Below, piece after piece: positions 4,395 to 64,000 of a stretch of 64,000 nucleotides of DNA (within the stretch, counting starts at the first letter, position 1; each line of letters opens with the position of its first letter). Below the pieces are notes generated by a model. The model saw nothing but the letters and a program-made list of their open reading frames with translations. It did no database searches and was not told where the DNA came from. The DNA is from Carpediemonas membranifera BICM (lineage: Eukaryota; Protista; Fornicata). The translations under genes were made by a program, and so were the position numbers. The stretch spans positions 1 to 64,000 of the forward strand of contig JAHDYR010000004.1 in the NCBI GenBank assembly GCA_019828565.1, read 5' to 3'.

Positions 4395-7300
4395 TTACCT
4401 ATACATGTCGTTCAGCGTGCGCAGGCCCGGGGCGCTGGGCGCGTTCGTGCGGTATGTCGCGGTGACCGTGCCCATCGCGGCGAGCGCGGCTGCTCTCTCG
4501 TCTTCGGACAGCGTCATCCAGGGCGCGCTGGCGTTCGCGAAGGTGTCGACCTCGTGGTTGCGCACGGCGCTCTCCGTGTACATCTCGGTCGCGACGCTGT
4601 CGGGCAGCGCGGCGACGACTTCCGCGAAGGTGGGGCGGTCGCGCGGGTCGGGCGCCACGCAGCGGCGGATCAGCTCGCCCACGGCCGCCGGCGTGCCCGC
4701 GGGGGTCATCGGCCGGTAGCCAGCCCGCACGTGCGCGCGGATGGTGTCGAGCCCGAGGCGCTCCTGGCGGTACGGGATGTCGCGCGCGGCGATCTCCCAG
4801 AGCGTGATGCCGAAGGCGAAGACGTCGGCCTTCTCGCCGCCCACGCCGTCGAAGCGCTCGGGCGCCATCCACGGCCACGAGCCCTCGACGTCCGCCACGC
4901 GCTGGTCGAGCCGCGCGGTCAGCCCAAAGTCGCTGATCTTGGCCTTCTTGTTCGCGACGAGGATGTTGAGCGACTTGAGGTCCCTGTGCTCGTAGCCCTC
5001 GCCCGCGATGAACGCCATGGCTGCCGCGGGATGTCGCGCGCGAACTTCAGCCGCGCGTCCCAGGGCAGGTCGGTTTTCGAGAGCAGCAGCGCCGAGAGCG
5101 ACCCCGACGCGAGCTCGAGCGCGAGCCGGATCTCCCGGTCGTCCTGCTCGAGCGCGTAGAGCGCGACGACGTTGCTGCGGCGCAGCTGCTTGTGGATGAA
5201 GATCTCGCTCTGGAGTCGGTCGGCCTGCACCGCGTTCAGGTCGGCCCGCGCGACGACCTTGACGGCGCAGTCGGTGCCGCCGTACGTGCCGCGGAAGACG
5301 GCCGCCATGCCGCCCTCGCCGATGCGGTCGGCCTGGCTGAACGCGATGCTGCCCGCCGGCTTCGTGATGTCCGCGTTGAGGTCGGGCTGCACGAGCGGCT
5401 CGGGCGTCTGGTCCTGGATCAGGAGATACTGCAGGTTGCTGCCCTTCTTGACTGTCTGCGCAGCCGTCTTGCCCTTGTACGTCGCGGCCCGGTCGGCGCC
5501 GTGCTTCAGCAGCAGGCTGACGATGTCGAAGTTGCCCGCCTTGACGGCAGCGAAGAGCGGCGGCATCTTGCCGTCCACGCCGTTCGCGGACACGCCCGCC
5601 ACGAGCAGGCGCTTCACGGCAGCGGTGTCGCCCTGCGTGATGTCGTCGCTGAGCTGCTTCGTCAGGGCGTCGTTGATGGCGGCCCGGATCACGCCGGCCA
5701 TGAGCGGGTCGGCCACGCCCTTGACGGCCTGCAGCGCGTTGACGCCGACCGGCGGGAGGAGGGGTCGAGCGCCGCGGGCGAGCAGCTTCGTCGCGGAGTC
5801 CCAGTGGCCGCCCTGGATGGCGACCACGAGCGCAGTCGTGTTCCGGCTGACGGTGTCGATGTCAACCCTCGCGGCCAGCATCGCGGCCAGCATCGGCGGC
5901 TTGGCGACGGCGGCCAGCAGCGGGTGGCCGTCCGGGAAGGCGTCGTCGAGCAGGCAGCCGGCCTTGAGCAGCGCCGCGAAGGCCTGCGGCTGGTCGTGCA
6001 CGAACGCGCTGTGCAGCGGCGACCGACCCTCGCGGTCGAGGCAGTTGAGGACGACGGGGCCGAACTTGACACTCCGGAGCAGCGTCTTCGAGCGCATCTT
6101 GGCGACGTCGCCGCTGATGATGTGCGCGTGGAGCTCGTCGCTCCTCTCCAGCGCTCTTCCTTGACGCGGCCCCTGAGCGCGGGCATCGGGTCCTTGGCGA
6201 GCGCCTGCACGGGCTGGAGGCGGGCGAGGTCGGTCCTCAGCGCGAGCACTCGCGCCTCGTGCTGCTCCGCGTGCGGGCCGGCGGCGGCCAGCAGGCGCTT
6301 GGCGTCGCTCAGAGCCGCGGCCACGCACAGCGCTCGTCAACGGCGTCGAGAGCACGTGTTTCAGTCAACAGTTTCTGCATCACGAGGTGGCGGTTGAGTA
6401 GCTCGAGAAGGGCTTCAACATCGGCGGCTTGGCTCGACGTGAATCCGGTAGGACCAAGAGAGACGGTGTATTCGGGGTGGGCCAGCCTCATCTCAAAAAG
6501 AGCGGGGCAGGCCCGTGGCGAGGATGTGGATGACGACCCGCGCCAGGTCGGCGAGGTAGAGGGGCGAGTCGTCGGACGGCAGGCGGATGTCGGCGCCGAG
6601 TGTGGGTCGGGCGCAGACCTCCTCGATCTCTGGCGAGTGCTTGATATGCCACTGCTTGACGGTCTTGTCGGAAGATCCAGAGAGCAGGGTCGACCCGTCT
6701 GGGGAGAATGCGACGCTCCACACCTTATCGGCATGACCCCTGAGCGTCTCGAAGCACTCGCCGCCGTCGATGCCCAGAGCTTGGTGGTGTTGTCCCATGA
6801 TCCAGAGACGATGGTCTTGCCGTCGGGGGAGATGGCGACGGTGGTGAGATAACTCGTGTGGCCCTCCAGAGTCTGCTCGAGTCTGCCCGACTCAGCGTCC
6901 CACACCTTGATCGTGTCATCAGACGATCCAGAGACGATGGTCTTGCCGTCAGGGGAGATGGCGACGGAGAGCACCCAATCTGAGTGCCCTTCCATCGTCC
7001 TGCACGCGCCGGTGGCGACGTCCCACGTCCTGACTGTCTTGTCATCGGATCCGGACACCAGCGTCTTGCCGTCTCGGGAGAAGGCGAGGCTGTTCACAAC
7101 ATCGGTGTGCCCCTCGAGCGTCTTGACGAGTCTGCCGGTCTGGTCCCACAGCTTGATCTTGCGGTCATCACCGCCCGAGGCGATGGTCGACCCGTCCGGG
7201 GAGACGGCGATGCACAAAACTTCCCCGCCATGCTCCATCGTCGTCGTGCACACGCCGCGCTTGCCCCACAGCTTGGTCGTCCCATCCCATGACCCAGTGA

Positions 7301-8926
7301 CCATGGCGCCGTCGGGGAGGAAGGCGACTCTGAGCACGTCATCGGTGTGACCCTTCATCGTCTGGATGCACTCAGCCATCCTCGCATGCCAGGCAGCGAG
7401 CAGATCGTCGACGGCGCTGTCGGGCTTGTCGGCGGCCAGCTTGCCATACCTCATCGTGACAGTGAGGTCGGGCTCAGTCAGCCTCATGCTGAACTCTCGG
7501 GGCCGCGCCGAGAGGTGGTCGAGGACGCGGGTGAGGTCGGCGACGGTGCCCTCGAGGCGGACGATGGCCGCGGCCGGGACAGGCTCGGCGAGGGTCTGGT
7601 CGAGGGCGGTGAGCTCGGGAGAGCGACCAAGGGACCACTACTTGGCGGTTTTGTCGTCAGATCCAGAGAGCAGGGTCGACCCGTCCGGGGAGAAGGCGAC
7701 GCAGCGCACCTAATCGTCATGGCCCCCTGAGCGTCTCGGAAGCACTCGCCGCTAGCGATGCTCCAGAGCTTGATGGTGTTGTCCCAAGACCCAGAGGCGA
7801 GGGTCCTGCCGTCGGGCGAGAAGGCGACGCTGCGGACAAAGCTCGCGTGCCCCCTGAGGACGGCGACGCACTCCCAGGTCCTGGTGTCCCAGAGTCTGAT
7901 GGTGTGGTCGCCAGACCCAGAGGCCAGCAGAGCGCCGTTCGGGGAGATGGCGACGGCGGCGACAGAATTCGTGTGGCTCCTCCAGAGTCTGCTCGAGTCT
8001 GCCCGACTCAGCGACCCACACCTTGATTGTCTTGTCCTTTGATCCAGAGACGATGGTCTTGCCGTCAGGGGAGATGGCGACGGAGAGCACCAAATCTGAG
8101 TGCCCTTCCATCGTCCTGCACACGCCGGTGGCGACGTCCCACGTCCTGACTGTGTTGTCATATGATCCGGACACCAGCGTCTTGCCGTCTGAGGAGAAAC
8201 CGACGCTTCTCACATCCCTGGTGTGCCCCTCGAGCGTCTTGACGAGTCTGCCGCGCCTCCACAGCTTGATCTTGCGGTCAGTCCCGCCCGATGCGATGGT
8301 TGACCCGTCCGGGGAGACGGCGATGCACCGAACAGCCCCGCTATGCTTCATCGTCGTTCTTGCACACGCCGCGCTTGTCCCACAGCTTGGTCGTCCCATC
8401 CCATGACCCAGTGACCATGGCGCCGTCGGGGGAGGAAGGCGACGCTGATCACCCAGTTGGTGTGACCCTTCATCGTCTGGATGCACTCAGCCATCCTCGC
8501 ATTCCAGGCAGCGAGCAGGTCGTCGACGGCGCTGTCGGGCTTGTCGGCGGCCAGCTTGCCATACCTCATCGTGACAGTGAGGTCGGGCTCAGTCAGCCTC
8601 ATGCTGAACTCTCTGGGCCGCGTCGAGAGGTGGTCGAGGACGCGGGTGAGGTCTGTAGCGGTGAGGGGCGAGGATCCGATGGGATTGAGGTGGAGCTTGC
8701 TATCTGGGGCGAAGATGCGCGTCGTGGCGTCGCTGATCATGTCCTCTACTGCTCTGCACTCGCTGCTGCGTGAGATTCTCGGGGAGGACGCACCATTGCT
8801 CAGATCTACTGCGTAAGCGCTCTTGAACTCGCCGCGGGCTGCATCTCTGCACCAACGGGATTGGGAACGTACCAGCTGCGTAAGTGGGAGGCGTGGAACG
8901 AACTTTCTGCATCGTCGCCGATTCAT
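4395..8926 (-). CDS. WD40-array receptor-like gene A: leader + 2 WD40 propellers (second lacks about one blade) + connector + ankyrin repeats + TKL-type kinase; several indels and one in-frame TAG at ~7711
   Basis: ORF fragments 8348-9190, 7752-8486, 6309-7487, 4919-6355 and 4395-5018 are colinear with intact copies C and E. Kinase motifs GEGGMA, AVK, HRDLKSLN, DFG, MAPE. Confidence 0.85.
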
Positions 8927-9324
8927 CCTCGCTGAATTTGGATGGTGTTTGCGACTTTGAGCAGTCCGACATCGTGACGTCCCAAAAAGTTCGTGTTTGT
9001 CCAGGTGTTCTCGGTGGCAGCCATCGTCGAGATGGCGTGACTCGCCGCCCACTGCGGGGTGATGCCGCCAATCAAATGATGAGCCTCCTTCCTCGGCCAG
9101 ATCGCACGAGGCCAAGCACCCACCCCACGCAAGCGATAAGATCACGAGTCTGGCAGAAAAATGACGAGTGGTAGATACATGATGCTGCATGGCCCCCTTT
9201 GCGGCGGCAGGTCAATACCACATGTTCGCGAGTGCGGGAGGCACGCATCGGACACGGCTGTCAGGGGAGTGTAGTTTATGGTAAGATAGACGCTGTCGAG
9301 GGCAGTATAACCTGCTCCTGGGTC

Positions 9325-9768: not shown

Positions 9769-9934
9769 TCAGCAGTGAGATTTGGGAAAAATTTGATCAG
9801 ACAGATCCAAGAATTCCGACCTGAGTTGAGACACTGCATGCGACGCCATCGCAGACACCTCACCTGCGCCACGTGGGTTCAGACCCTCGAGATTTAGTGA
9901 TCACTTCATTTTAGACAACGAGGCTTCATCCACC

Positions 9935-14957: not shown

Positions 14958-15473
14958 CTACCACTGGTCTGACATTCGGCCATTACTCCCTCGCCAAGCT
15001 GTCTTTCTCGACATCTTCGGATGCGACTTGGCCCAGTCGATGGAATCCGCGATGATGCCACCTCATGAGATGAGGTCGACATTGAGGCGAGTAACGAGAC
15101 CAGCGACAGGCCCCCGGGAGAGCGTGTCTCGCCCATCAATCACTTTACCGATCTATGCCGAGCGTGCGGTCTGGGGATCGCCTGCTTGGAATCTTTACTA
15201 CTCAGACAAACACTTCGGCGTCGCTCGCGAAGTGGCTGCCGCCAGCACACCGGTACCCGCCGCCGACCTTGATCCACTCGAATCCAACGGGGCACCGCCC
15301 GATCTGCCTCAGTCTCTGCTGAATGGCCGCCTCCTTCCGGCGCCTCTCCTCGGCCTCCCGCTGCTGGCGCTCGAGCTCACGGCGCGACTTCTCCTCTTTC
15401 TCACGCTTGAGTTGTTCCTCGATCTCCCGCAGACGACGAGCCTCCTCTTCTTTCCGGCGCCTCTCCTCAGCCT

Positions 15474-15530
15474 TGTGCCATTGTTGGCTTGCGCAGGTAG
15501 ATCTGTTTACATAAACTGCACTGGCTCTCA
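15474..15530 (-). repeat. 3' LTR (57 bp)
   Basis: tgtgccattgttggcttgcgcaggtagatctgtttacataaactgcactggctctca, identical to 19690-19746. Confidence 0.92.
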
Positions 15531-18500
15531 CTTCCCTCCTCAAGGCGAAGCTAGCCAGCTAACGGCGGCCATTGCCCCGGAACTTCCGCTTGTAACGTGC
15601 GAAGAGGGGCGTGAGACCTGGGTTGAGGCGTAGGTAGTCATCCAGGGCGGCGAGGCGGTCGTAATATGCGTTATACGGAATGTACGAGTCCTCGGAGTCT
15701 TCTAGGCCTTCCCAGTGGACGAGGAGCTCGAGGCGTCGGTTGCGCTCGCGGTGGCCGACGATGGCGGAGACTTGTTGTTCGTCTTGTTCGTATGCGGCGA
15801 TGCGCTCGAGTGTCTTGAGGTCTGCTGTGCCTGGGTCGAAGCGAATGAGGCGGTCCTGGTGGACGAGCAGCTCGGACTTGGTGACGAGGTCACGGAGGAC
15901 GAATGTGTTGGGGCTCTTCCCTTCCCTGAGGAGTTGTAGCGGGCCGCGGACTGGAGGCAGAATCTTGGATGGGGGCCTTGTGAGGGATATCTCAGGAGCA
16001 CTAGGCGTTCGAGTTTCCAGTCGAAGTTGTCCGCCGGTTGGGTTTGTGCGGCCTTGTGACGCTCGTATGCGGCGATCTTCGCGCGGGCTGCGTCGTGCAT
16101 GGCCTGTATGTCGGTGTGGAATGCGTTAATGGCCTGGATGGTAGGTGTGTCTTGCGTCGCCTTGGCGGCGCTGATGATGCGTGACTCCGGGAGGGCCGTG
16201 AGCGCGGACGTGTGTCCGAAAAGCAGCTCGAACGGCGTGAAGCCGGTAGTCGAGTGTGTCGAAGTGTTGATAATGTGTTGCACGATTGGGATAAGTGCGG
16301 GCCAGTCGGTCGTTTCTGAGTCTAGTAGCAGGGCGCGCAGTCTGCGCATGATGGTCCCATTGACTCTCTCGACAACGCCGTTACTCTGTGGGTGGTACGC
16401 CGTGGAGAACCTGTGGTTCAGGCTGATCTTCTTGTTGAGAGCGGCGATGGTTGAGTTCTTGAACTGGCTTCCCTGGTCTGTCTGGATCAGGCTGGGTGCG
16501 CCGAAGAGCGACCACACCTGGAGCATCGCGTCGGCGGCTTCTTCTGCCGAGGTTGACGCAACCGGCTTGAGCACAGTGAACTTGCTGAAGACGTCGATGA
16601 ACACGATCACGTGAGCGAGGCCATTCGTCTTTGGAAGCGGGCCGAGCGTGTCTATCTGCACCGCCTCGAATGGGCGGGTCTTCTGGGTCGTATGCCACTG
16701 GGCCTTGGCGATGGGGTGGGATTTGAGCTTCTGGCAGACTGGGCAAGTCGCGACGTGCTCCGCGACGTCTCGAGTTCATGGAAGACCAGGTCTTGCCGGC
16801 TTCCTTGAGATGGGCGATCGTTTGTTTGATCGAAGCATGGCCGTTGGCTCCAGCGTGGGCCTGCTGAATGTCGAAGCGGTGGGTGCTGCTGGCGATTTCG
16901 CTGATCGCCGCGCCGCTGGGGCGGGAGAGGGCGTCCGCGACGACGTTATTTGTCCCTGCGATATGCATGATGTCGAAGGGGTACTCGGATAGGATGAGTC
17001 TCCATCGCGTGAGCTTGCGCGTCCCTTCCTCAGCCTTGCGAATCATCCACACGATGTTCTTGTGATCTGTGAGTACGGTGAATGGCTTCAGCTTGAGAAT
17101 CTGGCTAAACTCTGGCCGGGTGATGCAGTATATGACTGCGTAGAGCTCTTGCTCGACCGTCGCCCAGCGGCGTTGGGTCTCTGTGAACGTCTTTTGAGAA
17201 GTACGCGAGGGGTTTCTTCGTGTCGCCCTCGTGTTGCCACAGCACTCCGCCGGCTGCGATTGTGGACGCGTCTGTCTCAAGTGTCCACTTGCAGGTCAGG
17301 TTGGGTAGTGCCAATGCCTTGTTGTCGGTGCACAGCTCCTTCAGAGCCGCGAATGCCTTGTCGTGTTCCTCAGTCCAAGGGAGCTTGTCTAGCTTCTTGG
17401 GTGACCCCTTGAGGAGGGCGTTGAGGGGGGCTGTGGCTGAGCTGAGTTGCGGGAGGTAGTTTGCGAGGTGGTTAAACTTGCCCATCGTGCGTCTGAGCTC
17501 TGTGACGGTGGTGGGGGGGCGGGCAGCTCCTTCAGCGCGGCGACGCGGCCTGGGCTCACCGAGCGGCCGGAGCTGTTGATGATGAATCCGCAGACCTCCC
17601 ACTTCGGCGGCGCCGATGGTACATTTGTCCGCACGGAGGCGCAGGCGGTTGTCCTTGGCTCTCTGGAGGGTGAGTCTCAGGGTGTTGAGGAATCCTTCTT
17701 CGGTCCGTGCGTAGAGGAATATGTCATCCACGTAGACCCGGTGGCCGGGGATGCCATCTAGCACGGCCTCCATCGCTCGTTGAAACTTGGAGGGGGCGTT
17801 CTTAAGTCCAAACGGGACCCCTGAGGAACTCGAATTGGTGCCCGGGGACTACGAACGAGGTAAGGGGATGCTGGCCGGCTCCATCAGCTGCTGCCAGTAT
17901 CCGGACCGGAGATCGAGTGATGCAAAGTAAGAGCATCCGCCGGCTTCGTGGGGCAGGTCCCTCAGATCGGGGGAGGGGAAAGGCGTCGTCCTTCGTGGCG
18001 TCGTTAAGATCGTTGAATGCGACGCAGAAGCGGGGTTCGCCGTTCTTCTTGGTTGCCATCGTGTGGCGGCTGGCGTGCTCGGACTGGCTGTCTCGTATGA
18101 TGCCGAGCTTCTTCATCTTCTCGATCTCGGAGAGGGCGGCTGAGCCAGCCTCTCCGACAAGCTGTCGAGGACGGCACTTGAGGTGAAAAATCGCGTGTGA
18201 GTTCGATCTTGTGAGGCTGTAGTTTGCTGCCTTCGGGCGGGAGAGCCGGGTCGAACACCTCATCGAACTCCTCGACGATGCTTCGGACCTTGTTGGCGAA
18301 CTCGGTGCCGTGGTCGTCCGGGATCGTGACGGCGAGCGAATGCTTCGAGTCCGAGGTTGACGCCGCTTCGAAGACGTCGGCGTCGATCATGTTGTGCTCT
18401 TCTAGATCGTCCTTATCATCCGGCTTCTCGGACGGGAGTATCAGTAGGCGGTCGTTGAGGACGTAGCCGATGTGCCTGAGGAGGTCCTTGCCGATCAGCA

Positions 18501-19689
18501 TCCTGTCGCTGGTGCCTGTGATCATGTGGACGTCCCAGTCGAGCGTGACGGTTTTGCCATCCATGCCAGGGAGTGTGATGGACATGGTGGCGATCTTGCC
18601 CACGGAGATAACGCGGTCGTCCGCGGCGAACAGGCGGAGGTCCGACTCGCGCCATTGGGGACGACGATCTGGCCGGAGATGGTCGGTCTCGAGGGTCGAG
18701 AGGGCGTCTATGCAGTCGCGGGCGGGACGCCAGTTGCCGTCCGAATCCCGCTCGATCAGCGCCTCGTATAGCGGGATCGCGTCGTCGTCGTATCCCCTTG
18801 AGGGGCGACAGACCGGACCGCAGCGCGGAGGGCGCTGTCGGGGATCTTATGGTAGCCATCGGCCTCGACGACGGGGTTGTACCCGTCGCACGCCTTCTGC
18901 AGGCGCAGAGTGTTAAGGCGGTGGGCCGCGTTCTGGCCGTACAGTTGGGTGCCCCTTGCTTGTGATGGCCTTGAGGCGTGCACCGCGGTCGAGTGTTGGC
19001 ATCAGGGTAAGGTACAGGTGAGGCAGGATGGTCCTGGCCCTCGGCGCGAAGCTGGTCACGCACGGACACGGGGGGCGGAGGGGCGGCCGTTGCCGCTGAC
19101 GGGGAGAGAGTTGACGATTCTCGCGACATCCGCGGCCGATCGGGCCGGTTTGTCGTCCAGGGGTTCGTTAGCGTCGCGAAGGTGAGGGTCGCATCCGGGT
19201 CCGCCTCGTGGCGGTCGTGGCTGGCCGTGCAGAGGCTGGCGAGCTTATCGTTCAGCTCGGCCTCGGCGCGGTCGTAAACAGCCTGCATCCGGCGCATCGC
19301 CGGGTCGAGAAGCGGGCTGTCCTTATAGGTGTTGGCGGCTGCAGCGCAGAGCAAGAAGAGATCGTCCTGCAGAGCGTCGATGATCGCGCGGTATCTTGCG
19401 CGGCACGACGTGGCGTGTCTGTCAGGTTCTTGCTTGGCGTGTTGTGCCTGCGAGACCACGTCAGGGATAAAGGGAGTCCCAGAACGACTCGAAGGTCGGG
19501 AACGTGGAGGTGGGCCGCCATGTGGCTTGTAGAAGCTCGAGGGTCTTTGCCGTGAATGCGTGGGGGAAAGAACGGGGTCTTTTGACGTTACCGACTTCCC
19601 GTAACCAGATCTCGTACCCCGTTGTGAGGGAAGAGACGTCTATCACGGATAGACCACTGTGTGATTCTGTAGAAGCAGAATATCGATAT

Positions 19690-19746
19690 TGTGCCATTGT
19701 TGGCTTGCGCAGGTAGATCTGTTTACATAAACTGCACTGGCTCTCA
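19690..19746 (-). repeat. 5' LTR (57 bp), contains the probable gag ATG (19697)
   Basis: Identical to 15474-15530; the MAQYRYSAST... reading frame starts inside it. Confidence 0.9.
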
Positions 19747-22700
19747 GCCTCCCGTTTCCGGCGCTCGAGCTCGCGGCGCGCCTTCTCCTCTTTTCTCACG
19801 CTTGAGTTGTTCCTCGATCTCTCGCAGACGCCGCTCCTCCTCCTCCCGACGGCGCTGCTCCTCGCGCTTGGCCAGCTCCAGCTCCTCCCCAGATCTCGTC
19901 GGTTACGCCCTCGTCGCGCTCAACGCGAGTCACCACATCGACAGTCTCGTCGACTTCCTCGACTTGCTCAACTCTGACGTCCTGCCGCGTCTCGCGTCTG
20001 GGCTGGACCTCGCTGTCGGTGGCGAGGGCGACTGGCTGCTCCTCGACGAGATGCGGCAGGCTGGCGCTCTCAGGGTGGTTCCGCTTGCACTTGACCATGG
20101 CGGCGTCGACGTCATCGGCCGCGATCGAAGGTTCAGCCTCGACGACCGAAGCGGCGCGGATCGCCTGCTGGCGTAGCAGGTCCTCGAAGATCGTGTTGGC
20201 GTCTCGTGCGTTGGCCCAGGAAGCCCGGCCAACAACGGCCTCGATGTGGCTGCGCAGAGCGGCCTGCTCGTTTGAGCCGAACTTGAGGTGCTCCCCCTCG
20301 AGCTTGCCCGCGATGAAGCTGGTGCAGTCGGCCGCCGACCAGTCGGGGAAGTCGATCGGCTCGGTGAAGCGCGAGCGGACGCCGGCGTTGACGTCCATCA
20401 TGCGGTCGAGATCGGCGCGGTAGCCCGCCAGGACGACGACGGTCTTGCCCTTGTGCTTGTCCGACGTCATCTCGCTGAGCATCGTCTCGATCGCCTCCTT
20501 GCCGAACATGCCCTCTCCAAGGCCGTAAGCCTCGTCCACGAAGAAGACGCCGCCGACCGCCTCGTCCATCAGCTCCTTGACTCGGCCCGGCGTCTGCCCC
20601 ACGTAGCCTGCCATCATGTCGCGTGCGACGACCTCCCTTGCACGTGTCGGTTGCCAGCACACCCAGGCGGTAGAGGATCTTGGCCATGCACCGCGCGATG
20701 GTCGTCTTGCCTGTGCCCGGGGAGCCCGAGAAGACGTAGTTGCGGACCAGCATTGAGGCGGCTGACTTGCCGTTCCGCTCCATGCCCTGCTTGATACGGA
20801 CGAGGTCCTCGAGCCTCTGCCGGATGTGGTTGACCTTTGTACAGGCCGTCGAGCGGCTCGAACGGGTCCTTGCCGTCGTCAGCCTGCGTGAGATCAGCAA
20901 CTGCGATCTTTCGCGAGGTTGGATCGCGCTGGATCATGTGGCGCTTCGCCTTGTTCACGAGGTTGACCACAGCGCGGGCGTTGCCAAAGTTGGGCTTGAC
21001 GCGCTCCTTGGCCAGCAGCTGTATCGCGTTGACAACGACAGCTCTGCGGCACGCGAGGCCGCTTTCGGCGATGGCGTGCTTCAGGATGGCCTCGAGCGCG
21101 GTGTCGTCGAAGTCGGCAAAGATGAACGCGCTCTCGGGGTCGAAGCGGCTCGCCAGCCCCGCGTTCTGGTTGCGCAGCATGCGGCGGATGGGCTCCTCGT
21201 AGCCGAGCATGAGCACCGCGATGTCGTCGCCGGGCTTGTTGTGCACGCGCTCAACGATCGTGTCAAGCGCCTCCCTTGCCGTACACGCCGTCGTCGAGGG
21301 AGTAGCACTCGTCGATGAGCAGCACCTTGCCGCGCGCCTCCTCGATCGCGGCCTTCGTTCTCGACCGGCTCTGCCCCACGGCGTCGCCGACCAGGTCGCT
21401 GGGCCGCTTCTCGATGACCTCGCCGCTGCTGAGCAGGCCCGTGTGCTTCAAGATCTGGCCGTACAGGCGTGCGACGGTCGTCTTGCCCGTCCCAGGGTTT
21501 CCGAAGAAGAGGCGGTTGAGTGCGAAGGCGTGCAGCGGGCGGAGGTGGAGCTCGTTGTCGTAGTTGACCTTCGCTGTCTGAAGCAGACCCCGGACAGCCT
21601 CCTTCACCTCGCCAAGCCCGGTCAAGCCGTCCAGCTCGGCCAGGAGACGGCGCAGCTCGGGGTTCGAGTCGGCCGATGGCGCTGGTCCGAGGATGTCCTC
21701 GGGCAGCAGCATGTGCTCGCCGCCCAAGATGAGGCGCTTGGCCGCAGCCTCGATGGCCTGGCTGAACATGTTGCGGACGGTGCGGCCGTTGGCGAAGGTG
21801 TCGCGCGACTTGAAGCGCTCGAGGCGACGGCCAGCGATCTCGGCAACTGCCGGGGCGAGGGACCAGCCCCTGCTTGGTCGCCAGCTGGGTGAACATCTCC
21901 TGCAGCGTGTCCTTGTCGAAGTCCTCGAGCACGAACTGGCGCGAGAAGCGGCTGTTCAGACCCGGGTTCGTCGCCAGCAGGTCCTTCATGTCGTCCTTGT
22001 AGCCTGCCAGGATGATCGTGACGTCGCCGCGGCGCGTCTCGGCCACGTCCAGGATGCGGTCCATGACTGACTTGCCCGACTTCTTCTGGGCGGGGTTCAG
22101 CTGGTAGGCCTCGTCGATGAAGACGGTGCCCCTGAAGCCGGCCGGGAAGAGGCTGTCCAACTCCTTCGTGATGTCCAGCGGCGACGTGTCGGCGAGGGTG
22201 CCGCCGTTGCGCTCGGTGAACGTGTCATCGCGAGCGCCGATGTCCGCCAGGAAGCGGTGGATCAGCTTAGCGCACGTGCTCTTGCCCGTGCCAGGGTTGC
22301 CGCTGAGGATGAAGTTGAGCTGCATCGGCGTGGCGGCGTAGAGCTGCGCAGTGCGCGGGTCGTTGCGGACGCGGATCTGCTGAGCGATGTCGATGCACTC
22401 CCTCTTCAGCGCGCGCATGCCGCTCATCGCTAGCAGCTCGTCCATCGCGGCGCTGGCCATGCCGTACTGCTCCCAGGCCTGCTGGATGCGGTCGTCCTCT
22501 GACTCCGGCTGCGGCTGAGGCTCGGCTTCGTTGTCGTCGGTTGACCGCTCATCGGCCGTCGCGAATCTCTCTGCCAGCTGCGGGAATGTCTCGCAGAAGA
22601 ACCGCGTGAGGGGGGCTGACCCGCGGATCCGGGCCTCGACGAGGATGGCGAGGGGGTCAGGCTCGGGGACGGCCGCCAGGTACTCGGCGAGCTCCTCCTC

Positions 22701-28700: not shown

Positions 28701-29144
28701 CAGCCATCCTCGCATGCCAGGCAGCGAGCAGATCGTCGACGGCGCTGTCGGGCTTGTCGGCGGCCAGCTTGCCATACCTCATCGTGACAGTGAGGTCGGG
28801 CTCAGTCAGCCTCATGCTGAACTCTCTGGGCAGCCCGTCCAATGTCGAGAGGTGGTCGAGGACGCGGGTGAGGTCTGTAGCAGTGAGGGGCGTGGATCCG
28901 ATGGGCTTGAGGTGGAGCTTGTCCTCTGGGGCGAAGATGCGCGTCGTGGCGTCTCTGATCATGTCATCTACTGCTCTGCACTCGCTGCTGCGTGATATTC
29001 TCGGGGAGGACGCACCATTGCTCAGATCTACTGCGTAAACGCTCTTGAACTCGCCGCGGGCTGCATCTCTGCACCAACGGGATAGGGAACGTACCAGCTG
29101 CGTAAGTGGGAGGCGTGGAACGAACTTTCTGCATCGTCGCTGAT

Positions 29145-30419: not shown

Positions 30420-30449
30420 AATAAAAATAAATGCGATGGAATAAATATA

Positions 30450-31760: not shown

Positions 31761-31788
31761 CTCTAGCACATATACACACGTATAAACA

Positions 31789-39359: not shown

Positions 39360-40493
39360 CTCGCTGAATTTGGATGGTGTTTGCGACTTTGAGCAGTCCG
39401 ACATCGTGACGTCCCAAAAGTTCGTGTTTGTCCAGGTGTCTCTGGTGGCAGCCATCGTCGAGATGGCGTGACTCGCCGCCCACTGCGGGGTGATGCCGCC
39501 AATCAAATGATGAGCCTCCTTCCTCGGCCCCAGGTCGCACACGACGAGTTGCCTCGATCTGTCTCCCGTCACAGCCACGAGCTTCGTCCCTACAGCCGTG
39601 AGCACGTGGGCGCCCTGCTCTGCGTCGGGCAGGATGTGGTCTCTGTGGGGGTGGCTGTTGAACGAGCCGTTGTTGTGGTACACAACTGCCCCACCGCGCT
39701 CGTCGCCGGCGATGATGTGGCCTTGGGCCGAGAACGAGGCAGCCAGCATTGATCGCTGACACCTATGGTTCGAGAAGACCGTCAGGGGCCGAGTAAGATG
39801 TCTCGCGTCCCACAGCTTGACGGTCGAGTCCCGACCCGAGCTGAGTATCTCCCCATGCGGCGAGACGTCGAGAGTGTTGAGAGCATGTCGGTGTGCCCTC
39901 ACAGCCTCACCCCAGGTATCGGCGCGAGGGTCGTAGAGGCTAAAGTACCCGGCCCTGTTAGTAACAACCAGGCTGGGGTCGGCGGTGTCGCCATGGAGCT
40001 GTCTGATGGCGGAGGGGCCGGTGCTCACCCCGATGGATGGCATGTGTGAGATGGAAGCACGCGAGGACAGCCGCATGCTGTGGACGTCCCGGGAGACTAT
40101 CGTGCCGTCGATCAGGCCATGTAGAGGCGAGGCAGCGGCCAAAGGATTTACCGTCTAGTGAAGCTCATCTGCGTGGCTGTGGGCGTGTTCATGAAGCTCT
40201 GCTCGTACCCGCCCCGCTGCCCGAGCACGGTCGCCACGCCCATGACGGAGCCGGCAGTCATCGCCTTGGAAAGGGCGTTCGAGCGCTTCCCGCCGAACAC
40301 AAGGCCTGACGCCTCGTAGAGGAGGTCTCGGCTCTTCCCGCCGGGGGTGTGTCCAAGGTACCGCTTGAACCCAGAGGAGAGCTTCTCGTCGGGGGTCTCC
40401 TCCGCGGCAGTGGTGCTCGCCGCACGCTCGAGAATGGACCGCCTGAGCAACGCGTCCTTGTTCTCGTACTCCTTCAGCCTCTTGTCGAGCTCC
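39360..40493 (-). pseudogene. Third, 5'-truncated copy of WD40 gene 'W'
   Basis: Matches ~29150-30290; homology ends abruptly at 40493, where gene D sequence begins. Confidence 0.75.
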
Positions 40494-46361: not shown

Positions 46362-46373
46362 TCTTCATCAACC

Positions 46374-49554: not shown

Positions 49555-52500
49555 TTACATATACATGTCGTTCAGCGTGCGCAGGCCCGGGGCGCTGGGC
49601 GCGTTCGTGCGGTATGTCGCGGTGACCGTGCCCATCGCGGCGAGCGCGGCTGCTCTCTCGTCTTCGGACAGCGTCATCATGCCGGGGGCGCTGGCGTTCG
49701 CGAAGGTGTCGACCTCGTGGTTGCGCACGGCGCTCTCCGTGTACATCTCGGTCGCGACGCTGTCGGGCAGCGCGGTGACGACCTCCGCGAAGGTGGGGCG
49801 GTCGCGCGGGTCGGGCGCCACGCAGCGGCGGATCAGCTCGCCCACGGCCGCCGGCGTGCCCGCGGGGATCATCGGCCGGTAGCCAGCCCGCACGTGCGCG
49901 CGGATGGCGTCGAGCCCGAGGCGCTCCTGGCGGTACGGGATGTCGCGCGCGGCGATCTCCCAGAGCGTGATGCCGAAGGCGTAGACGTCGGCCTTCTCGC
50001 CGCCCACGCCGTCGAAGCGCTCGGGCGCCATCCACGGCCACGAGCCCTCGACGTCCGCCACGCGCTGGTCGAGCCGCGCGGTCAGCCCGAAGTCGCTGAT
50101 CTTGGCGCTGCCCTTCGCGACGAGGACGTTGAGCGACTTGAGGTCCCTGTGCTCGTAGCCCTCGCCCGCGATGAACGCCATGGCCGCCGCGATGTCGCGC
50201 GCGAACTTCAGCCGCGCGTCCCAGGGCAGGTCGGCCTTCGAGAGCAGCAGCGCCGAGAGCGACCCCGACGCGAGCTCGAGCGCGAGCCGGATCTCCCGGT
50301 CGTCCTGCTCGAGCGCGTAGAGCGCGACGACGTTGCTGTGGCGCAGCTGCTTGTGGACGAAGATCTCGCTCTGGAGTCGGTCGGCCTGCATCGCGTTCAG
50401 GTCGGCCTGCGCGACGACCTTGACGGCGCAGTCGGTGCCGCCGTACGTGCCGCGGAAGACGGCCGCCATGCCGCCCTCGCCGATGCGGTCGGCCTGGCTG
50501 AACGCGATGCTGCCCGCCGGCTTCGTGATGTCCGCGTTGAGGTCGGGCTGCACGAGCGGCTCGGGCGTCTGGTCCTGGATCAGGAGATACTGCAGGTTGC
50601 TGCCCTTCTTGACTGTCTGCGCAGCCGTCTTGCCCTTGTACGTCGCGGCCCGGTCGGCGCCGTGCTTCAGCAGCAGGCTGACGATGTCGAAGTTGCCCGC
50701 CTTGACGGCAGCGAAGAGCCGCGGCATCTTGCCGTCCACGCCGTTCGCGGACACGCCCGCCGCGAGCAGCCGCTTCACGGCAGCGGTGTCGCCCTGCATG
50801 ATGGCGTCGCTGAGCTGCTTCGTCAGGGCGTCGTTGATGGCGGCCCGGATCACGCCGGCCATGAGCGGGTCGGCCACGCCCTTTACGACCTGCAGCGCGT
50901 TGACGCCGACCGGCGGGAGGAGGGGGTCGGCGCCGCGGGCGAGCAGCTTCGTCGCGGAGTCCCAGTGGCCGCCCTGGATGGCGACCACGAGCGCAGTCGT
51001 GTTCCGGCTGACGGTGTCGATGTCAACCCTCGCGGCCAGCATCGCGGCCAGCATCGGCGGCTTGGCGACGGCGGCCAGCAGTGGGTGGCCGTCCGGGAAG
51101 GCGTCGTCGAGCAGGCAGCCGGCCTTGAGCAGCGCCGCGAAGGCCTGCGGCTGGTCGTGCACGAACGCGCTGTGCAGCGGCGACCGGCGCTCGCGGTCGA
51201 GGCAGTTGAGGACGACGGGGCCGAACTTGACACTCCGGAGCAGCGTCTTCGAGCGCATCTTGGCGACGTCGCCGCTGATGATGTGCGCGTGGAGCTCGTC
51301 GCTCCTCTCCAGCGCCTCCTTGACGCGGCCCCTGAGCGCGGGCATCGGGTCCTTGGCGAGCGCCTGCACGGGCTGGAGGCGGGCGAGGTCGGTCCTCAGC
51401 GCGAGCACTCGCGCCTCGTGCTGCTCCGCGTGCGGGCCGGCGGCGGCCAGCAGGCGCTTGGCGTCGCTCAGATCCGCGGCCACGTACAGCGCTTCGTCAA
51501 CGGCGTCGAGAGCACGTGTTTCAGCCAACAGTGTCAGTAACATAGGGTGGCGGTTGAGTAGCTCGAGAAGGGCTTCAACATCGGCGGCTTGGCTCGACGT
51601 GAATCCGGTAGGACCAAGAGAGACGGTGCATTCGGGGTGGGCCAGCCTCATCTCAAAAGAGCGGGGCAGGCCCGTGGCGAGGATGTGGATGGCGACCCGC
51701 GCCAGGTCGGCGAGGTAGAGGGGCGAGTCGTCGGACGGCAGGCGGATGTCGGCGCCGAGCGTGGATTGGGCGCAGACCTCCTCGATCTCTGGCGACTTGA
51801 TGGAGGGCCACTGTTTGGCGGTCTTGTCCTTTGACCCAGAGAGCAGGGTCGACCCGTCTGGGGAGAAGACGACGCTCCACACCTTATCGGCATGACCCCT
51901 GAGCGTCTCGAAGCACTCGCCGCTGCCGATGCTCCAGAGCTTGGTGTTGTCACCAGACCCAGAGGCGAGGGTCCTGCCGTCGGGCGAGAAGGCGACACTG
52001 CGGACAGAACTCGCGTGCCCCATGAGGACGGCGACGCACTCCCAGGTCCTGGTGTCCCAGAGTCTGATGGTGTTGTCGCAAGACCCAGAGGCCAGCAGAG
52101 CGCCGTCCGGGGAGATGGCGACGGCGGCGACAGAATTCGTGTGGCCCTCCAGAGTCTGCTCGAGTCTGCCCGACTCAGCGTCCCACACCTTGATTGTCTT
52201 GTCCCTTGATCCAGAGACGATGGTCTTGCCGTCGGGGGAGATGGCGACGGAGAGCACCCAATCTGAGTGCCCTTCCAACGTCCTGCACTCGCCGGTGGCG
52301 ACGTCCCACGACCTGACTGTCTTGTCATCGGATCCGGACACCAGCGTCTTGCCGTCTCGGGAGAAGGCGAGGCTGTTCACAATATCGGTGTGTCCCTCGA
52401 GCGTCTTGACGAGTCTGCCGCGCCTCCACAGCTTGATCTTGCGGTCAGTCCCGCCCGAGGCGATGGTCGACCCGTCCGGGGAGACGGCGATGCACCGAAC

Positions 52501-53097
52501 AGCCCCGCCATGCTCCATCGTCATCTTGCACACGCCGCGCTTGTCCCACAGCTTGGTCGTCCCATCTGATGACCCGGTGACCATGGTGCCGTCAGGGAGG
52601 AAGGCGACGCTGATCACGTCAGCGGTGTGACTCTTCATCGTCTGGATGCACTCAGCCATCCTCGCATGCCAGGCAGCGAGCAGATCGTCGATGGCGCTGT
52701 CGGGCTTGTCGGCGGCCAGCTTGCCATACCTCATCGTGACAGTGAGGTCGGGCTCAGTCAGCCTCATGCTGAACTCTCTGGGCAGCACGTCCAATGTCGA
52801 GAGGTGGTCGAGGACGCGGGTGAGGTCTGTAGCGGTGAGGGGCGAGGATCCGATGGGCTTGAGGTGGAGCTTGCTATCTGGGGCGAAGATGCGCGTCGTG
52901 GCGTCTCTGATCATGTGATCTACTGCTCTGCACTCGCTGCTGCGTGAGATTCTCGGGGAGGACGCACCATTGCTCGGATACACTGCGTAAGCGCTCTTGA
53001 ACTCGCCGCGGGCTGCATCTCTGCACCGAAGCGGGGAACGTACCAGCTGCGTAAGTGGGAGGCGTGGAACGAACTTTCTGCATCGTCGCTGATTCAT
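49555..53097 (-). CDS. WD40-array gene E (intact): leader + 1 WD40 propeller + connector + ankyrin repeats + TKL-type kinase
   Basis: Uninterrupted 1229-codon ORF (open to 53244), paralogous to gene C. Confidence 0.93.
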   Translation of the reverse strand: MNQRRCRKFVPRLPLTQLVRSPLRCRDAARGEFKSAYAVYPSNGASSPRISRSSECRAVDHMIRDATTRIFAPDSKLHLKPIGSSPLTATDLTRVLDHLSTLDVLPREFSMRLTEPDLTVTMRYGKLAADKPDSAIDDLLAAWHARMAECIQTMKSHTADVISVAFLPDGTMVTGSSDGTTKLWDKRGVCKMTMEHGGAVRCIAVSPDGSTIASGGTDRKIKLWRRGRLVKTLEGHTDIVNSLAFSRDGKTLVSGSDDKTVRSWDVATGECRTLEGHSDWVLSVAISPDGKTIVSGSRDKTIKVWDAESGRLEQTLEGHTNSVAAVAISPDGALLASGSCDNTIRLWDTRTWECVAVLMGHASSVRSVAFSPDGRTLASGSGDNTKLWSIGSGECFETLRGHADKVWSVVFSPDGSTLLSGSKDKTAKQWPSIKSPEIEEVCAQSTLGADIRLPSDDSPLYLADLARVAIHILATGLPRSFEMRLAHPECTVSLGPTGFTSSQAADVEALLELLNRHPMLLTLLAETRALDAVDEALYVAADLSDAKRLLAAAGPHAEQHEARVLALRTDLARLQPVQALAKDPMPALRGRVKEALERSDELHAHIISGDVAKMRSKTLLRSVKFGPVVLNCLDRERRSPLHSAFVHDQPQAFAALLKAGCLLDDAFPDGHPLLAAVAKPPMLAAMLAARVDIDTVSRNTTALVVAIQGGHWDSATKLLARGADPLLPPVGVNALQVVKGVADPLMAGVIRAAINDALTKQLSDAIMQGDTAAVKRLLAAGVSANGVDGKMPRLFAAVKAGNFDIVSLLLKHGADRAATYKGKTAAQTVKKGSNLQYLLIQDQTPEPLVQPDLNADITKPAGSIAFSQADRIGEGGMAAVFRGTYGGTDCAVKVVAQADLNAMQADRLQSEIFVHKQLRHSNVVALYALEQDDREIRLALELASGSLSALLLSKADLPWDARLKFARDIAAAMAFIAGEGYEHRDLKSLNVLVAKGSAKISDFGLTARLDQRVADVEGSWPWMAPERFDGVGGEKADVYAFGITLWEIAARDIPYRQERLGLDAIRAHVRAGYRPMIPAGTPAAVGELIRRCVAPDPRDRPTFAEVVTALPDSVATEMYTESAVRNHEVDTFANASAPGMMTLSEDERAAALAAMGTVTATYRTNAPSAPGLRTLNDMYM

Positions 53098-54006
53098 CTC
53101 GCTGAATTTGGATGGTGTTTGCGACTTTGGGCAGTCCGCCATCGTGACGTCCCAAAAGTTCGTGTTTGTCCAGGTGTCTCTGGTGGCAGCCATCGTCGAG
53201 ATGGCGTGACTTGCCGCCCACTGCGGGGTGATGCCGCCAATCAAATTCGGATGCTGTCGTGTCAGCGATTTATGAATTTACGTATTTATCCAGTTGTGTA
53301 TCAGTATATGTTCAAACCACGCCCAGGCCCCACCGAGGGCGAGGGTTGGGCATGACGCCGGTGTTCATAGGACTCATGGTTTCGAGTTCAATGCTACGAC
53401 CCTTTCGAATCGCATCTCTAAACTTTACTCGAATGCGTGTAAACCACGACTGGCCACGATTCAGCCGTTGAGGGGCGCCGAGGCACTCCGCGCTGACTCC
53501 GCTGGGTGGCGGCGGTGGGAGGGGGTGGGGGAAGGTGTGGGGGGTGGATGACCGACGGTGCCAGGCGGAGCAGGTGGTTGATATAGACACGGATAAATTC
53601 GTAAACTTGTGTAAACAACTGGCTCAGGCCGACAGCTCGACTGGGAGGAGCTCCAGTGGGCTGAACAATCCCAGCTTGACATTCCACTTGTCGTACACCA
53701 GAAGGGTAGCGGACATGAGGGCGTCGGCGATGGTAAGGGCGATCTTGCGGGCAGAGATGTGGAATCTGGCTGCGGACGCGTCAAGGTAGGCCTTTTATGT
53801 CCATTCAGCATATATACAGAGATCGACAGCGTTGGCTCACATGCATCGCTGACCTCGAGACACCCTGACTAACCTTGTGGGGACATGGGAGCGGTGATGG
53901 CCCGACCCACCCGAGAAGCCAGTCTGCCCACGGCTACGGCGAATGCCCAGGCCGTCCAGCATGCTGCCTTTGGTTCGTTGACTCAGCCACTTCCCAACAC
54001 ATTCCC

Positions 54007-60744: not shown

Positions 60745-60883
60745 GCTGAGTAGTGATATCGTTGTAAATAGGCAGTATGATTGCCATCCACAAGTAATAA
60801 ACGCGGCCGTAGTTTATAAATCACAGTAATAATGCCTACAGCCAGCTATATAACGTACGACGCTGCTATGTTCACCCCAGCCG

Positions 60884-61989: not shown

Positions 61990-64000
61990 ATGATGAGCCC
62001 AAAATTCATCCACAACAACAGGATGCAGCAGCGACGATGCAGAAAGTTCGTTCCACGCCTCCCACTTACGCAGCTGGTACGTTCCCCGCTTCGGTGCAGA
62101 GATGCAGCCCGCGGCGAGTTCAAGAGCGCTTACGCAGTGTATCCGAGCAATGGTGCGTCCTCCCCGAGAATATCACGCAGCAGCGAGTGCAGAGCAGTAG
62201 AGGACATGATCAGCGACGCCACGACGCGCGTCTTCGCCCCAGAGGACAAGCTCCACCTCAAGCCCATCGGATCCTCGCCCCTCACTGCTACAGACCTCAC
62301 CCGCGTCCTCGACCACCTCTCGACATTGGACGTGCTGCCCAGAGAGTTCAGCATGAGGCTGACTGAGCCCGACCTCACTGTCCGTTTAGAAGGAGATGAA
62401 CTCATCTCTGACATGCCCACCGACAGCCAGCTCAAGGGCCTGCTTGGCAATTGGAATAGGACAAGGCCGCGCTCTTGCATACACACCCTGGGCAACCACG
62501 GCAGTATCATCACCAGCGTCGCCATCCTCCCGGACTTCACCATGGTCACTGGGTCACGCGACGGACCCGACCGACTATGGTCCACAAACGGGAAATGTAT
62601 CAGGAGTTTCAGTGGCCGCGAGGATGGCGAGGGTGGCACACACCTGGCTGCAGCATCTGACGGGTCGACCCACCTTGCGTGTAGATGGGGGTGTGACCTC
62701 AAACTCTGGGATGTGACAACAGGAGAGCTAATTCGAGTAATGAGGGGTCACATGAAGTCTGTGTACTGCGTGACACTCTCTTGTGATTGCAGAACTATTG
62801 TGACCGGTCTCAGGGACGGTTCGATCATATCTTGGAATATTTACAGTGGGGTTTCTCTATGGGAAGTCCAGGGTCATTCTGGTTCGGTTGAGTGTATCAC
62901 GTTCTCTCCGTGTGGCAAGACTATTGTCTCTGGCTCTGGGGATGACACGATCAAGGTGTGGGACGAAGCTTCTGGCATACTCGAGCAGACTCTGGAGGGC
63001 CATGCAGACAGTGTAAGCGCAGTGGCATTCTCTCATGACGGCGCCATGCTGGCGTCTGGGTCATATGACACTTCGATAAGGCTCTGGGACACCGAGACGT
63101 GGGCTTCTGTCATCGAACTCAGAGGCGACTCGGGCTGGGTCACAAGCCTCGCCTTCTCGCCTTGTGTCGGCATGCTTGCTTCGGGACATTCTAGCGGCGC
63201 TGTCAAGGTATGGAACAGCAGCTGTGCTGAGTCAATCAAAACGCTCAGGGGCCATAGGGCGTCGGTGCTCAGTGTAGCCATTTCCCCAGACGGGTCGACC
63301 CTGCTCTCTGGCTCTGACGACAAGACCGCCAAGCAGTGGCATATCAAGCACTCGCCAGAGATCAAGGAGGTCTGCGCCCAACCCACGCTCGGCGCCGACA
63401 TCCGCCTGCCGTCCGACGACTCGCCCCTCTACCTCGCCGACCTGGCGCGGGTCGTCATCCACATCCTCGCCACGGGCCTGCCCCGCTCCTTCGAGATGAG
63501 GCTGGCCCACCCACCTGTCGCTGTCAGCATGGATGATGGCCTCTTCTTTGAGACCCCATCAAACTCCGAGGTTAGCGGCCTACTCGCCCCGCTCAACCAG
63601 AGTCGCCTCAACAAGCTGGTCGCCCAGGCCTGCACCGACGCCGGGATCGCCCTGCCTGCCGCGTCCACCGCCGTCATGGACCCTAACGGCTTCATCTCAG
63701 TCTCGCCCGCGGATGACAAGATCGCCGCCGCCCTACTGCCGCTCAACCATCTTAGACTCGACGCAGCAGTTGCTAGAGTCTGCGCCCAAGCGGTCACGGC
63801 CAAGACCGCGATCAGAGTCACCCACGCCGACCTGCCCGCGCTGAAGAAGCTCCTCGCGCGCGTCGAGGCCTCTAGGGTCGCGCCCCGCTCATTCGAGGTT
63901 CAGCTCGACGACCCAGCCGCCACCGTCACCCTCGGCCCGACCGGCTTCGAGGTCGCCCCACCCAGCGATGTTGTCGATTATGTTGTCAGCGGCTTCAGCT
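61990..64000 (+). CDS. WD40-array gene F (runs off the window; absent from the ORF track): leader + 1 strongly diverged WD40 propeller + tandem connector domains
   Basis: Manually translated open frame from ATG 61990 to the window end. Leader 62028-62381 is the near-exact reverse complement of 52741-53092, and 63290-63931 of ~40722-41365; the propeller between them is divergent. Confidence 0.88.
   Translation, partial: MMSPKFIHNNRMQQRRCRKFVPRLPLTQLVRSPLRCRDAARGEFKSAYAVYPSNGASSPRISRSSECRAVEDMISDATTRVFAPEDKLHLKPIGSSPLTATDLTRVLDHLSTLDVLPREFSMRLTEPDLTVRLEGDELISDMPTDSQLKGLLGNWNRTRPRSCIHTLGNHGSIITSVAILPDFTMVTGSRDGPDRLWSTNGKCIRSFSGREDGEGGTHLAAASDGSTHLACRWGCDLKLWDVTTGELIRVMRGHMKSVYCVTLSCDCRTIVTGLRDGSIISWNIYSGVSLWEVQGHSGSVECITFSPCGKTIVSGSGDDTIKVWDEASGILEQTLEGHADSVSAVAFSHDGAMLASGSYDTSIRLWDTETWASVIELRGDSGWVTSLAFSPCVGMLASGHSSGAVKVWNSSCAESIKTLRGHRASVLSVAISPDGSTLLSGSDDKTAKQWHIKHSPEIKEVCAQPTLGADIRLPSDDSPLYLADLARVVIHILATGLPRSFEMRLAHPPVAVSMDDGLFFETPSNSEVSGLLAPLNQSRLNKLVAQACTDAGIALPAASTAVMDPNGFISVSPADDKIAAALLPLNHLRLDAAVARVCAQAVTAKTAIRVTHADLPALKKLLARVEASRVAPRSFEVQLDDPAATVTLGPTGFEVAPPSDVVDYVVSGFS

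What the first reader, a model, noticed from the sequence alone, without database searches (positions are those of the whole stretch)
4395..64000. Candidate new innate-immune/allorecognition system: variable WD40-propeller arrays fused to interchangeable effector modules, with no NACHT/NB-ARC domain
Seen: six paralogues share one leader (lost in D), carry 2, 5, 3, >=2, 1 and 1 WD40 propellers, and end in different modules. A, C and E end in ankyrin + TKL kinase, B in a triple CbxX-type AAA+, and D and F in extra connector repeats. A seventh member probably starts just left of position 1. Known: fungal NWD/HET-E NLRs use near-identical WD40 repeats with hypervariable top-face residues as sensors, but couple them to a NACHT NTPase and an N-terminal effector, and repeat single blades. 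Here the repeated unit is a whole 7-blade propeller plus linker, the sensor is N-terminal, and no STAND NTPase is visible. Inference: an independently evolved, combinatorially diversified intracellular sensor-effector family in a protist.
Basis: partly seen in the sequence, partly recalled or inferred. Interest (0 to 1): 0.92.

Follow-up and report, generated by a model that had tools for sequence, protein, structure and literature searches.

The report
NLR-like WD40 sensors without nucleotide switch
The free-living protist Carpediemonas membranifera has about 50 genes in which fast-evolving WD40 binding surfaces are joined, through a previously undescribed small hinge domain, to interchangeable kinase or ATPase modules; they evolve like fungal immune receptors but lack the ATP switch that defines those receptors, and their function is untested.

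Summary
The family is real and larger than reported. The genome is Carpediemonas membranifera. Propeller counts of 2, 5, 3, ≥2, 1 and 1 hold. No NACHT or NB-ARC match was found in the genome.

Corrections: F continues past the window into ankyrin-kinase, and D is a truncated relic, so connector repeats are not an output. A, B and D carry real lesions; only C and E are intact.

About 50 loci fall into three output types: ankyrin-TKL kinase, triple CbxX-like AAA+, and a second kinase with IBR or RhoGEF. An ~85-aa connector brackets every propeller. It is found only in this species, has no clear fold match, and module swaps fall inside it.

Across 21 propellers (93% identical), amino-acid variation concentrates at the HET-E top-face positions (dN/dS about 6 versus 0.37) and is mosaic. 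A short-read, RNA-like run confirms those variants, shows transcription, and shows most 1-bp frameshifts are assembly errors.

Best reading: STAND-free intracellular non-self sensors activated by clustering (0.55). Ligand and output are untested. Other windows of this genome noted the same family; I found no paper describing it.

The parts
1..669 (-). Upstream WD40 fragment and start region of a probable seventh (B-type) member that runs off the contig start
   Evidence: 1-7125 repeats 29206-36327 at 95.6%; window starts at contig position 1
4395..8972 (-). Member A: leader, connector, 7-blade propeller, TAG stop (7640-7638), connector, 6-blade propeller, connector, helical region, ankyrins, TKL kinase; probable pseudogene
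   Evidence: near-identical copies at C5 111k, 141k, 170k
15202..15469 (-). Detached C-terminal tail of B: coiled coil plus the CPxG..W..RCxGGxH motif typical of the triple-AAA module
   Evidence: the motif lies near the C-terminus of 31 of 119 triple-AAA homologues
15474..19747 (-). Ty3/gypsy retroelement inserted in B's coil; identical 58-bp TG..CA LTRs, AGGC target duplication; body has no depth in the RNA-like runs
19748..23250 (-). B output: helical region and three CbxX/SpoVK/EccA-type AAA+ modules with intact Walker A, Walker B and arginine-finger motifs
   Evidence: five single-base frameshifts are absent from the short-read contig
23251..29193 (-). B sensor: leader and five connector+propeller units; real 10-bp deletion near 27100
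29300..29856 (-). Upstream WD40 fragment duplicated with B and C (in frame with C); not shown to be part of the protein
33573..39404 (-). Member C, intact: leader, three connector+propeller units, connector, helical region, ankyrins, TKL kinase
   Evidence: start codon inferred from the 5' alignment
40474..43104 (-). Member D, relic: partial propeller with the 10-bp deletion, full propeller, about three connectors, then a break into an unrelated gene
49555..53142 (-). Member E, intact (1195 aa): leader, connector, one propeller, connector, helical region, ankyrins, TKL kinase with catalytic motifs intact
61990..64000 (+). Member F: leader, connector, one diverged propeller, tandem connectors; continues beyond the window into ankyrin-kinase
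35583..35822 (-). Example of the ~85-aa connector domain (core PRSFxMRL); module types diverge directly after this motif

Best explanation
A lineage-specific family of cytosolic sensor-output proteins in a biotic conflict (pathogen, endosymbiont, virus or selfish element), working like fungal HNWD NLRs but without a STAND switch. Shown: (1) each sensor unit is a 7-blade WD40 propeller whose top face is under diversifying selection while the scaffold is conserved and shuffled between copies; (2) unit number varies from 1 to 5; (3) outputs are exchanged inside a shared ~85-aa connector, which acts as the recombination joint; (4) outputs are intact enzymes (TKL kinase, a second kinase with IBR or RhoGEF, triple AAA+); (5) the family is transcribed and many copies are broken (birth and death). 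Inferred: a foreign protein binds one or several top faces; multivalent binding clusters the molecules or relieves self-inhibition, so the kinase trans-phosphorylates or two triple-AAA chains close a six-module ring. Induced proximity would replace the ADP/ATP switch of NLRs. No signal peptide or membrane segment was apparent on reading the sequences (not tested with a predictor), so an intracellular site is assumed.
For: 29 of 42 HET-E-equivalent positions show three or more residues, versus 10 of 241 others (P=3e-21), and all 21 units have different top-face haplotypes. dN/dS is 6.2 versus 0.37 with shared synonymous rate (LRT 119), and 1.6 with a class-specific rate (P=0.006). Four-gamete incompatibility rises from 0.25 to 0.62 with distance. 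20 of 29 variants in the RNA-like contigs hit top-face codons (15% expected) and 26 match genomic alleles. The same positions are the selected binding face of HET-D/E (PMC1805685, PMC12222747). Junction sequences are shared up to the PRSFxMRL motif and then diverge by type. Three output classes genome-wide. No NACHT or NB-ARC.
Against: No ligand, induction or phenotype is known. A count-based test using only the top-face codons' own synonymous changes is not significant (ratio 1.27, P=0.41; six of seven blades for the loop positions), and recombination inflates single-tree dN/dS. Synonymous change is also raised about 3.7-fold at these codons. All five AAA-type copies are lesioned, and the one seen in RNA has a stop just before AAA1. 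One strain and one RNA data set only. My search for a described virus or parasite of this species found nothing.
Confidence: 0.55

Rival explanations
1. Allorecognition or mate-compatibility system: the propellers read a polymorphic self protein after cell fusion, as HET-D/E read HET-C, and trigger rejection.
For: Same selected positions and concerted evolution as het-d/het-e (PMC1805685). The species has Hap2 and Gex1 and is probably haploid and sexual (PMC8516963).
Against: About 50 loci with three unrelated outputs looks broader than one het locus. No polymorphic partner was identified. Fungal NLR families of this kind are mostly of unknown function, with only some acting in allorecognition (abstracts).
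Confidence: 0.12
2. Non-defence signalling or targeting family: variable propellers are substrate adaptors that direct kinases, ubiquitin-related or AAA+ activities to different cellular or prey-derived proteins, and diversify by paralogue specialisation.
For: Outputs are ordinary signalling modules, and the same ankyrin block is reused in other families of this genome. WD40 top faces are the normal place for any change in specificity.
Against: Very recent mosaic shuffling among 93%-identical units, variable unit number and frequent pseudogenes fit an arms race better than stable subfunctions.
Confidence: 0.2
3. Largely neutral by-product of an unstable, segmentally duplicated, retroelement-rich contig end; top-face variation reflects relaxed constraint plus a local mutation or conversion hotspot.
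For: 29.2-kb tandem duplication, nearly identical copies, many lesions. Raised synonymous rate at top-face codons. The genome lacks canonical replication factors and may depend on recombination (PMC8516963).
Against: The scaffold is under purifying selection (ratio 0.37-0.41). Top-face codons differ by multi-base, radical changes and give a ratio above 1 even on their own synonymous rate. Intact members of 1500-2400 aa lie on many contigs.
Confidence: 0.1
4. Assembly artefact: architectures and copy number come from mis-joined Nanopore reads.
For: R9.4 Nanopore assembly (PMC8516963). A and B copies differ almost only by homopolymer indels (B versus the 86k copy: 2 substitutions and 29 gaps in 7.4 kb), so some may be redundant. 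No short-read contig was shown to bridge the propeller-AAA junction by 31 bases on each side.
Against: Each architecture recurs at diverged loci and, for kinase types, on other contigs. The independent short-read data contain the AAA module as one 3.5-kb contig and the same top-face alleles.
Confidence: 0.03

Closest known systems
Fungal HNWD/NWD NLRs (Podospora het-d, het-e, het-r)
   Same: WD40 sensor with near-identical repeats, concerted evolution, variable repeat number, pseudogene members, and diversifying selection at the d-a loop and b-c turn positions of the top face (PMC1805685, PMC12222747).
   Different: No NACHT; sensor is N-terminal and output C-terminal; the homogenised unit is connector + whole propeller (blades within a unit only 34-63% identical) rather than a single blade; outputs swap at a dedicated domain.
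Fungal NLRs in general (variable effector-NOD-repeat architectures, including kinase effectors)
   Same: Combinatorial exchange of effector domains, with a protein kinase among them, and repeats of high internal conservation (PMC4986451).
   Different: The central NOD that defines them was not found in these proteins or in the genome.
Bacterial WD40 proteins with conserved repeats and kinase fusions (PkwA, PDB 5yzv; WD40 repeat protein 2ymu)
   Same: Closest solved propellers are of this type; PkwA joins a Ser/Thr kinase to WD40 repeats without a STAND domain (own knowledge).
   Different: Kinase is N-terminal in PkwA (own knowledge); here it is a C-terminal TKL-type kinase behind ankyrins, with connectors and alternative outputs. 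Descent was not tested.
Triple SpoVK/CbxX/EccA-type AAA+ module of oomycetes, chytrids, algae and others (often fused to helicase/NFX1 or ankyrin parts)
   Same: 30-43% identity over the three AAA modules and the same C-terminal CPxG..RCxGGxH motif. One metagenome protein (P0071) also fuses near-identical WD40 repeats to it.
   Different: None of the homologues I tested carries the connector. I found no paper giving this module a function.
Giardia NEK kinase-ankyrin expansion (own knowledge, not tested)
   Same: Large lineage-specific kinase plus ankyrin family in a fornicate.
   Different: Different kinase group, no WD40 sensor, many inactive kinases; here catalytic motifs are intact.

Membership tests
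NLR / STAND receptors (HNWD type) | Central NACHT or NB-ARC NTPase | tested here: not met
   No PF05729 or PF00931 match in the genome (controls responded). The only NTPase is CbxX/SpoVK-type AAA+.
NLR / STAND receptors (HNWD type) | N-terminal effector and C-terminal repeat sensor | tested here: not met
   Order is connector-propeller(s)-output in all members mapped.
NLR / STAND receptors (HNWD type) | WD40 repeats of high internal conservation under concerted evolution | tested here: met
   Units 89-97% identical, mosaic; the unit is the whole propeller.
NLR / STAND receptors (HNWD type) | Diversifying selection at top-face positions 10, 11, 12, 14, 30, 32 | tested here: met
   weaker in the count-based test. 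Position 39 is not variable.
NLR / STAND receptors (HNWD type) | Ligand-triggered oligomerisation and cell death or defence output | not testable with these tools
   Needs biochemistry or culture work.
TKL protein kinases | Intact catalytic motifs and TKL signature | tested here: met
   PF07714 best kinase match; glycine loop, VAVK-like lysine, HRDLKSLN, DFG and WMAPE present. No kinase tree was built.
CbxX/SpoVK/EccA AAA+ clade | AAA + AAA_lid_6 modules with Walker A/B and arginine finger | tested here: met
   Three modules, all motifs intact; scores are below the CbbX and EccA cut-offs and just below SpoVK's, so it is not one of those equivalogues.
Diversity-generating retroelement targets | Adenine-specific mutation of the variable region | tested here: not met
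   Variable top-face columns: A 27/36, C 17/28, G 33/40, T 16/22.
   No Pfam or PDB sequence match for that segment; kinase and IBR do match. No structure was predicted.
Known protein domain families (connector) | Sequence or fold match | tested here: not met
   No Pfam/NCBIfam hit; full-length profile hits only in C. membranifera; best fold Z 5.2, Foldseek E 0.11, Atlas TM 0.52. A weak match does not prove a new fold.

The most novel reading that the evidence does not exclude
A protist with no detectable NLRs has independently built an intracellular immune-receptor repertoire from whole WD40 propellers, a new hinge domain that serves as both spacer and recombination joint, and swappable kinase, ubiquitin-related and AAA+ outputs, activated by clustering rather than by a nucleotide switch.
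Probability: 0.4. Interest if true: 0.88.

Novelty: new variant of a known kind. Interest (0 to 1): 0.72.

Why it matters
Intracellular non-self recognition in free-living protists is little known, and the known repeat-sensor systems of fungi, plants and animals depend on a STAND NTPase. Here the same WD40 surface positions are diversified as in fungal HET-E, in a distant eukaryote where no NACHT or NB-ARC was found. If the function holds, the switch is dispensable and the design evolved twice. The species is culturable and two window members (C, E) are intact, so ligand and activation are directly testable. The connector is an undescribed, well-folded domain.

Tried and rejected
I did not seek those letters by another tool; members outside the window rest on loci L001-L030, on coordinates, and on database proteins. 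So I did not read the 68-74k AAA copy beyond 71253 or the junction of F with its kinase.

Connector repeats as an output class: rejected. Frameshifts as proof of decay: rejected for 1-bp indels, accepted for the shared TAG, the 10-bp deletion and the retroelement. TAG read as glutamine (as in Iotanema): unlikely, since the 2289-aa neighbour frame ends in TAG and the reassignment is reported as specific to Iotanema; not tested genome-wide. A short intron in the leader: rejected, splicing it would create a stop and length differences are multiples of three. Adenine-directed mutagenesis: rejected. Known fold for the connector: none found; weak bacterial profile hits cover only 20-35 positions. 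The tail query was in the wrong frame; its 100% hits still give the copy positions, and its C67 hit is meaningless. IQ-TREE did not print dN/dS, so I fitted a codon model on its tree. Paper searches found no description of this family or of the triple-AAA module; the library lacks most subscription journals.
Full report
Source. The window is the first 64 kb of contig C5 of a 24.24-Mb, 69-contig genome. Database names identify it as Carpediemonas membranifera, matching the published assembly (24.2 Mb, 69 contigs, Nanopore R9.4 plus Illumina; PMC8516963).

Anatomy in the window. Mapping modules of the intact frame C onto the window gives six members with 2, 5, 3, at least 2, 1 and 1 propellers. 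A, C and E end in a helical region, ankyrins and a TKL kinase with intact catalytic motifs. B ends in three CbxX/SpoVK-type AAA+ modules with intact Walker A, Walker B and arginine-finger motifs. F does not stop at its connector repeats: its frame continues to about 65,050 and an ankyrin-kinase 97% identical to C's follows. D is cut by a gypsy integrase at its 5' end and breaks into another gene at its 3' end. Positions 1-7125 repeat 29206-36327, which places a B-type start at the contig edge.

Errors versus real lesions. A and B each have three near-identical copies further along C5. They differ mainly by single-base indels next to the same base, the pattern of unpolished long reads. A 3564-nt short-read contig over B's AAA region lacks all five extra bases. 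Three lesions are shared between copies and so are real: a CAG-to-TAG change after A's first propeller, a 10-bp deletion in B's second propeller and in D, and a Ty3/gypsy element with identical 58-bp LTRs between B's AAA modules and its tail. Only C and E are intact here. Some of the near-identical copies may be assembly redundancy.

Family size. Coordinate searches show about 22 loci with ankyrin-TKL kinase, five with the triple AAA+, and more than 20 with a second kinase followed by an unassigned segment and an IBR finger, once by RhoGEF. That is roughly 50 loci, counting duplicates and broken copies. Of the five AAA copies, four have 4-11 kb between AAA3 and the tail, and the fifth (C5:68-74k) has a stop just before AAA1.

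The connector. An ~85-aa domain with a PRSFxMRL core lies before and after every propeller and forms tandem arrays of up to about nine. At least 150 copies occur in the genome. A profile search of 1.84 billion proteins gave full-length hits only in C. membranifera; other hits cover 20-35 positions. It folds confidently (pLDDT 89.5; strand-helix-three strands-helix), and three in tandem give pLDDT 86.7 and pTM 0.72. No fold search gave a clear match. Sequences of A-F are shared up to the core motif and diverge by type right after it, and D's break also lies there. The connector therefore serves as the homology joint for swaps; a structural role as spacer is inferred.

Selection. I took 21 distinct connector+propeller units, masked codons with indels, and labelled the positions published for HET-D/E (d-a loop and the residues flanking the conserved Asp; PMC1805685, PMC12222747). 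The labels come from those papers, but I had seen the alignment first. Units are 89-97% identical, blades within a unit 34-63%. Three or more residues occur at 29 of 42 labelled positions and 10 of 241 others, and every unit has its own top-face haplotype. A codon model gives dN/dS 6.2 versus 0.37 with a shared synonymous rate, and 1.6 (P=0.006) with a separate one. A conservative count on the labelled codons alone is not significant (1.27), and recombination inflates tree-based values. Incompatibility between sites rises with distance, showing mosaics. There is no adenine bias.

Expression. Runs X1 and X2 give the same contigs and behave as RNA: the multicopy retroelement has no depth, the AAA region 29, the propeller region 130-400. 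Their kind is not on record, so this is one data set and an inference. Of 29 variants seen in these contigs, 20 hit labelled codons (15% expected) and 26 match genomic alleles, so the variation is not long-read noise. The only AAA-type contig carries six substitutions including the stop, and so corresponds to the 68-74k copy, not to B. An ATG follows three codons after that stop, so a split product is possible; it is more simply a null allele. Extra depth on the shared connector half implies that kinase types are also transcribed. No contig was shown to bridge the propeller-AAA junction.

Mechanism. The best-supported reading is a set of intracellular sensors in a biotic conflict. Variable top faces bind foreign ligands, tandem propellers add avidity or breadth, and clustering switches on the C-terminal enzyme. 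Diversification by selection, shuffling, unit-number change and output swapping is shown; ligand, activation and outcome are inferred. Rivals are allorecognition, non-defence adaptors, neutral duplication and artefact.

Comparison. It works like fungal HNWD NLRs in how the sensor evolves, but is not a member: no NACHT or NB-ARC match was found in the genome and the domain order is reversed. The propeller resembles bacterial conserved-repeat WD40 proteins such as 2ymu and PkwA. The ankyrin-kinase block has no close relative with a propeller outside this species. The triple AAA+ with its cysteine motif is a widespread mobile module in microbial eukaryotes, and one metagenome protein has independently fused it to WD40 repeats. 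I found no paper on this family. Other first-stage notes on this genome describe the same family; they are not independent evidence.

Verdict. A real, transcribed, undescribed family with a new domain and an arms-race signature; function untested. New variant of a known kind, interest 0.72.

Noticed in passing
window 15474-19747 (-): Ty3/gypsy element with identical 58-bp LTRs, a purine tract before the 3' LTR, a 4-bp target duplication, and a 12-bp palindrome rather than an obvious tRNA primer site at the end of the 5' LTR; body silent in the RNA-like runs.
   Followed up: partly
window 43105-46400 (-): Second gypsy element, cut within integrase and joined directly to D's propeller.
   Followed up: partly
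window 53875-60744 (+): Intronless 2289-aa frame with no Pfam or NCBIfam hit; Atlas look-alikes (0.92-0.97) are hypothetical proteins of Verrucomicrobiota and Planctomycetota, with weaker alpha-2-macroglobulin-like hits.
   Followed up: partly
C5:71543 (window-equivalent 22469) and window 7640: Two separate CAG-to-TAG stops fall at domain boundaries; the one before AAA1 is in the transcribed copy and is followed by an ATG three codons later.
   Followed up: partly
window 1-7125 and 29206-36327; 9924-10677 and 46363-47110: 29.2-kb segmental duplication carrying a DHHC palmitoyltransferase-like gene and other neighbours, and a duplicated piece of a coiled-coil gene; mirrored on the + strand further along C5.
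   Followed up: partly
L031:740-4060 (P0071): Metagenome protein with near-identical WD40 repeats fused to the same triple-AAA module but no connector: an apparently independent fusion.
   Followed up: partly
P0163, P0165, P0167 (same species): The ankyrin block of A/C/E is reused in other families: behind a small GTPase with a TKL kinase, and ahead of a tail with an OTU-protease-like cysteine motif (seen by eye only).
   Followed up: no
P0009 (same species): 1678-aa protein made of about 12 diverged connectors with no propeller or output detected; possible source of the domain.
   Followed up: no
window 47750-48823 (-), 12209-12958 (+), 14190-14882 (+): Ordinary neighbours judged by eye: glycerol dehydrogenase-like, capping protein beta-like and RCC1-like genes.
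   Followed up: no
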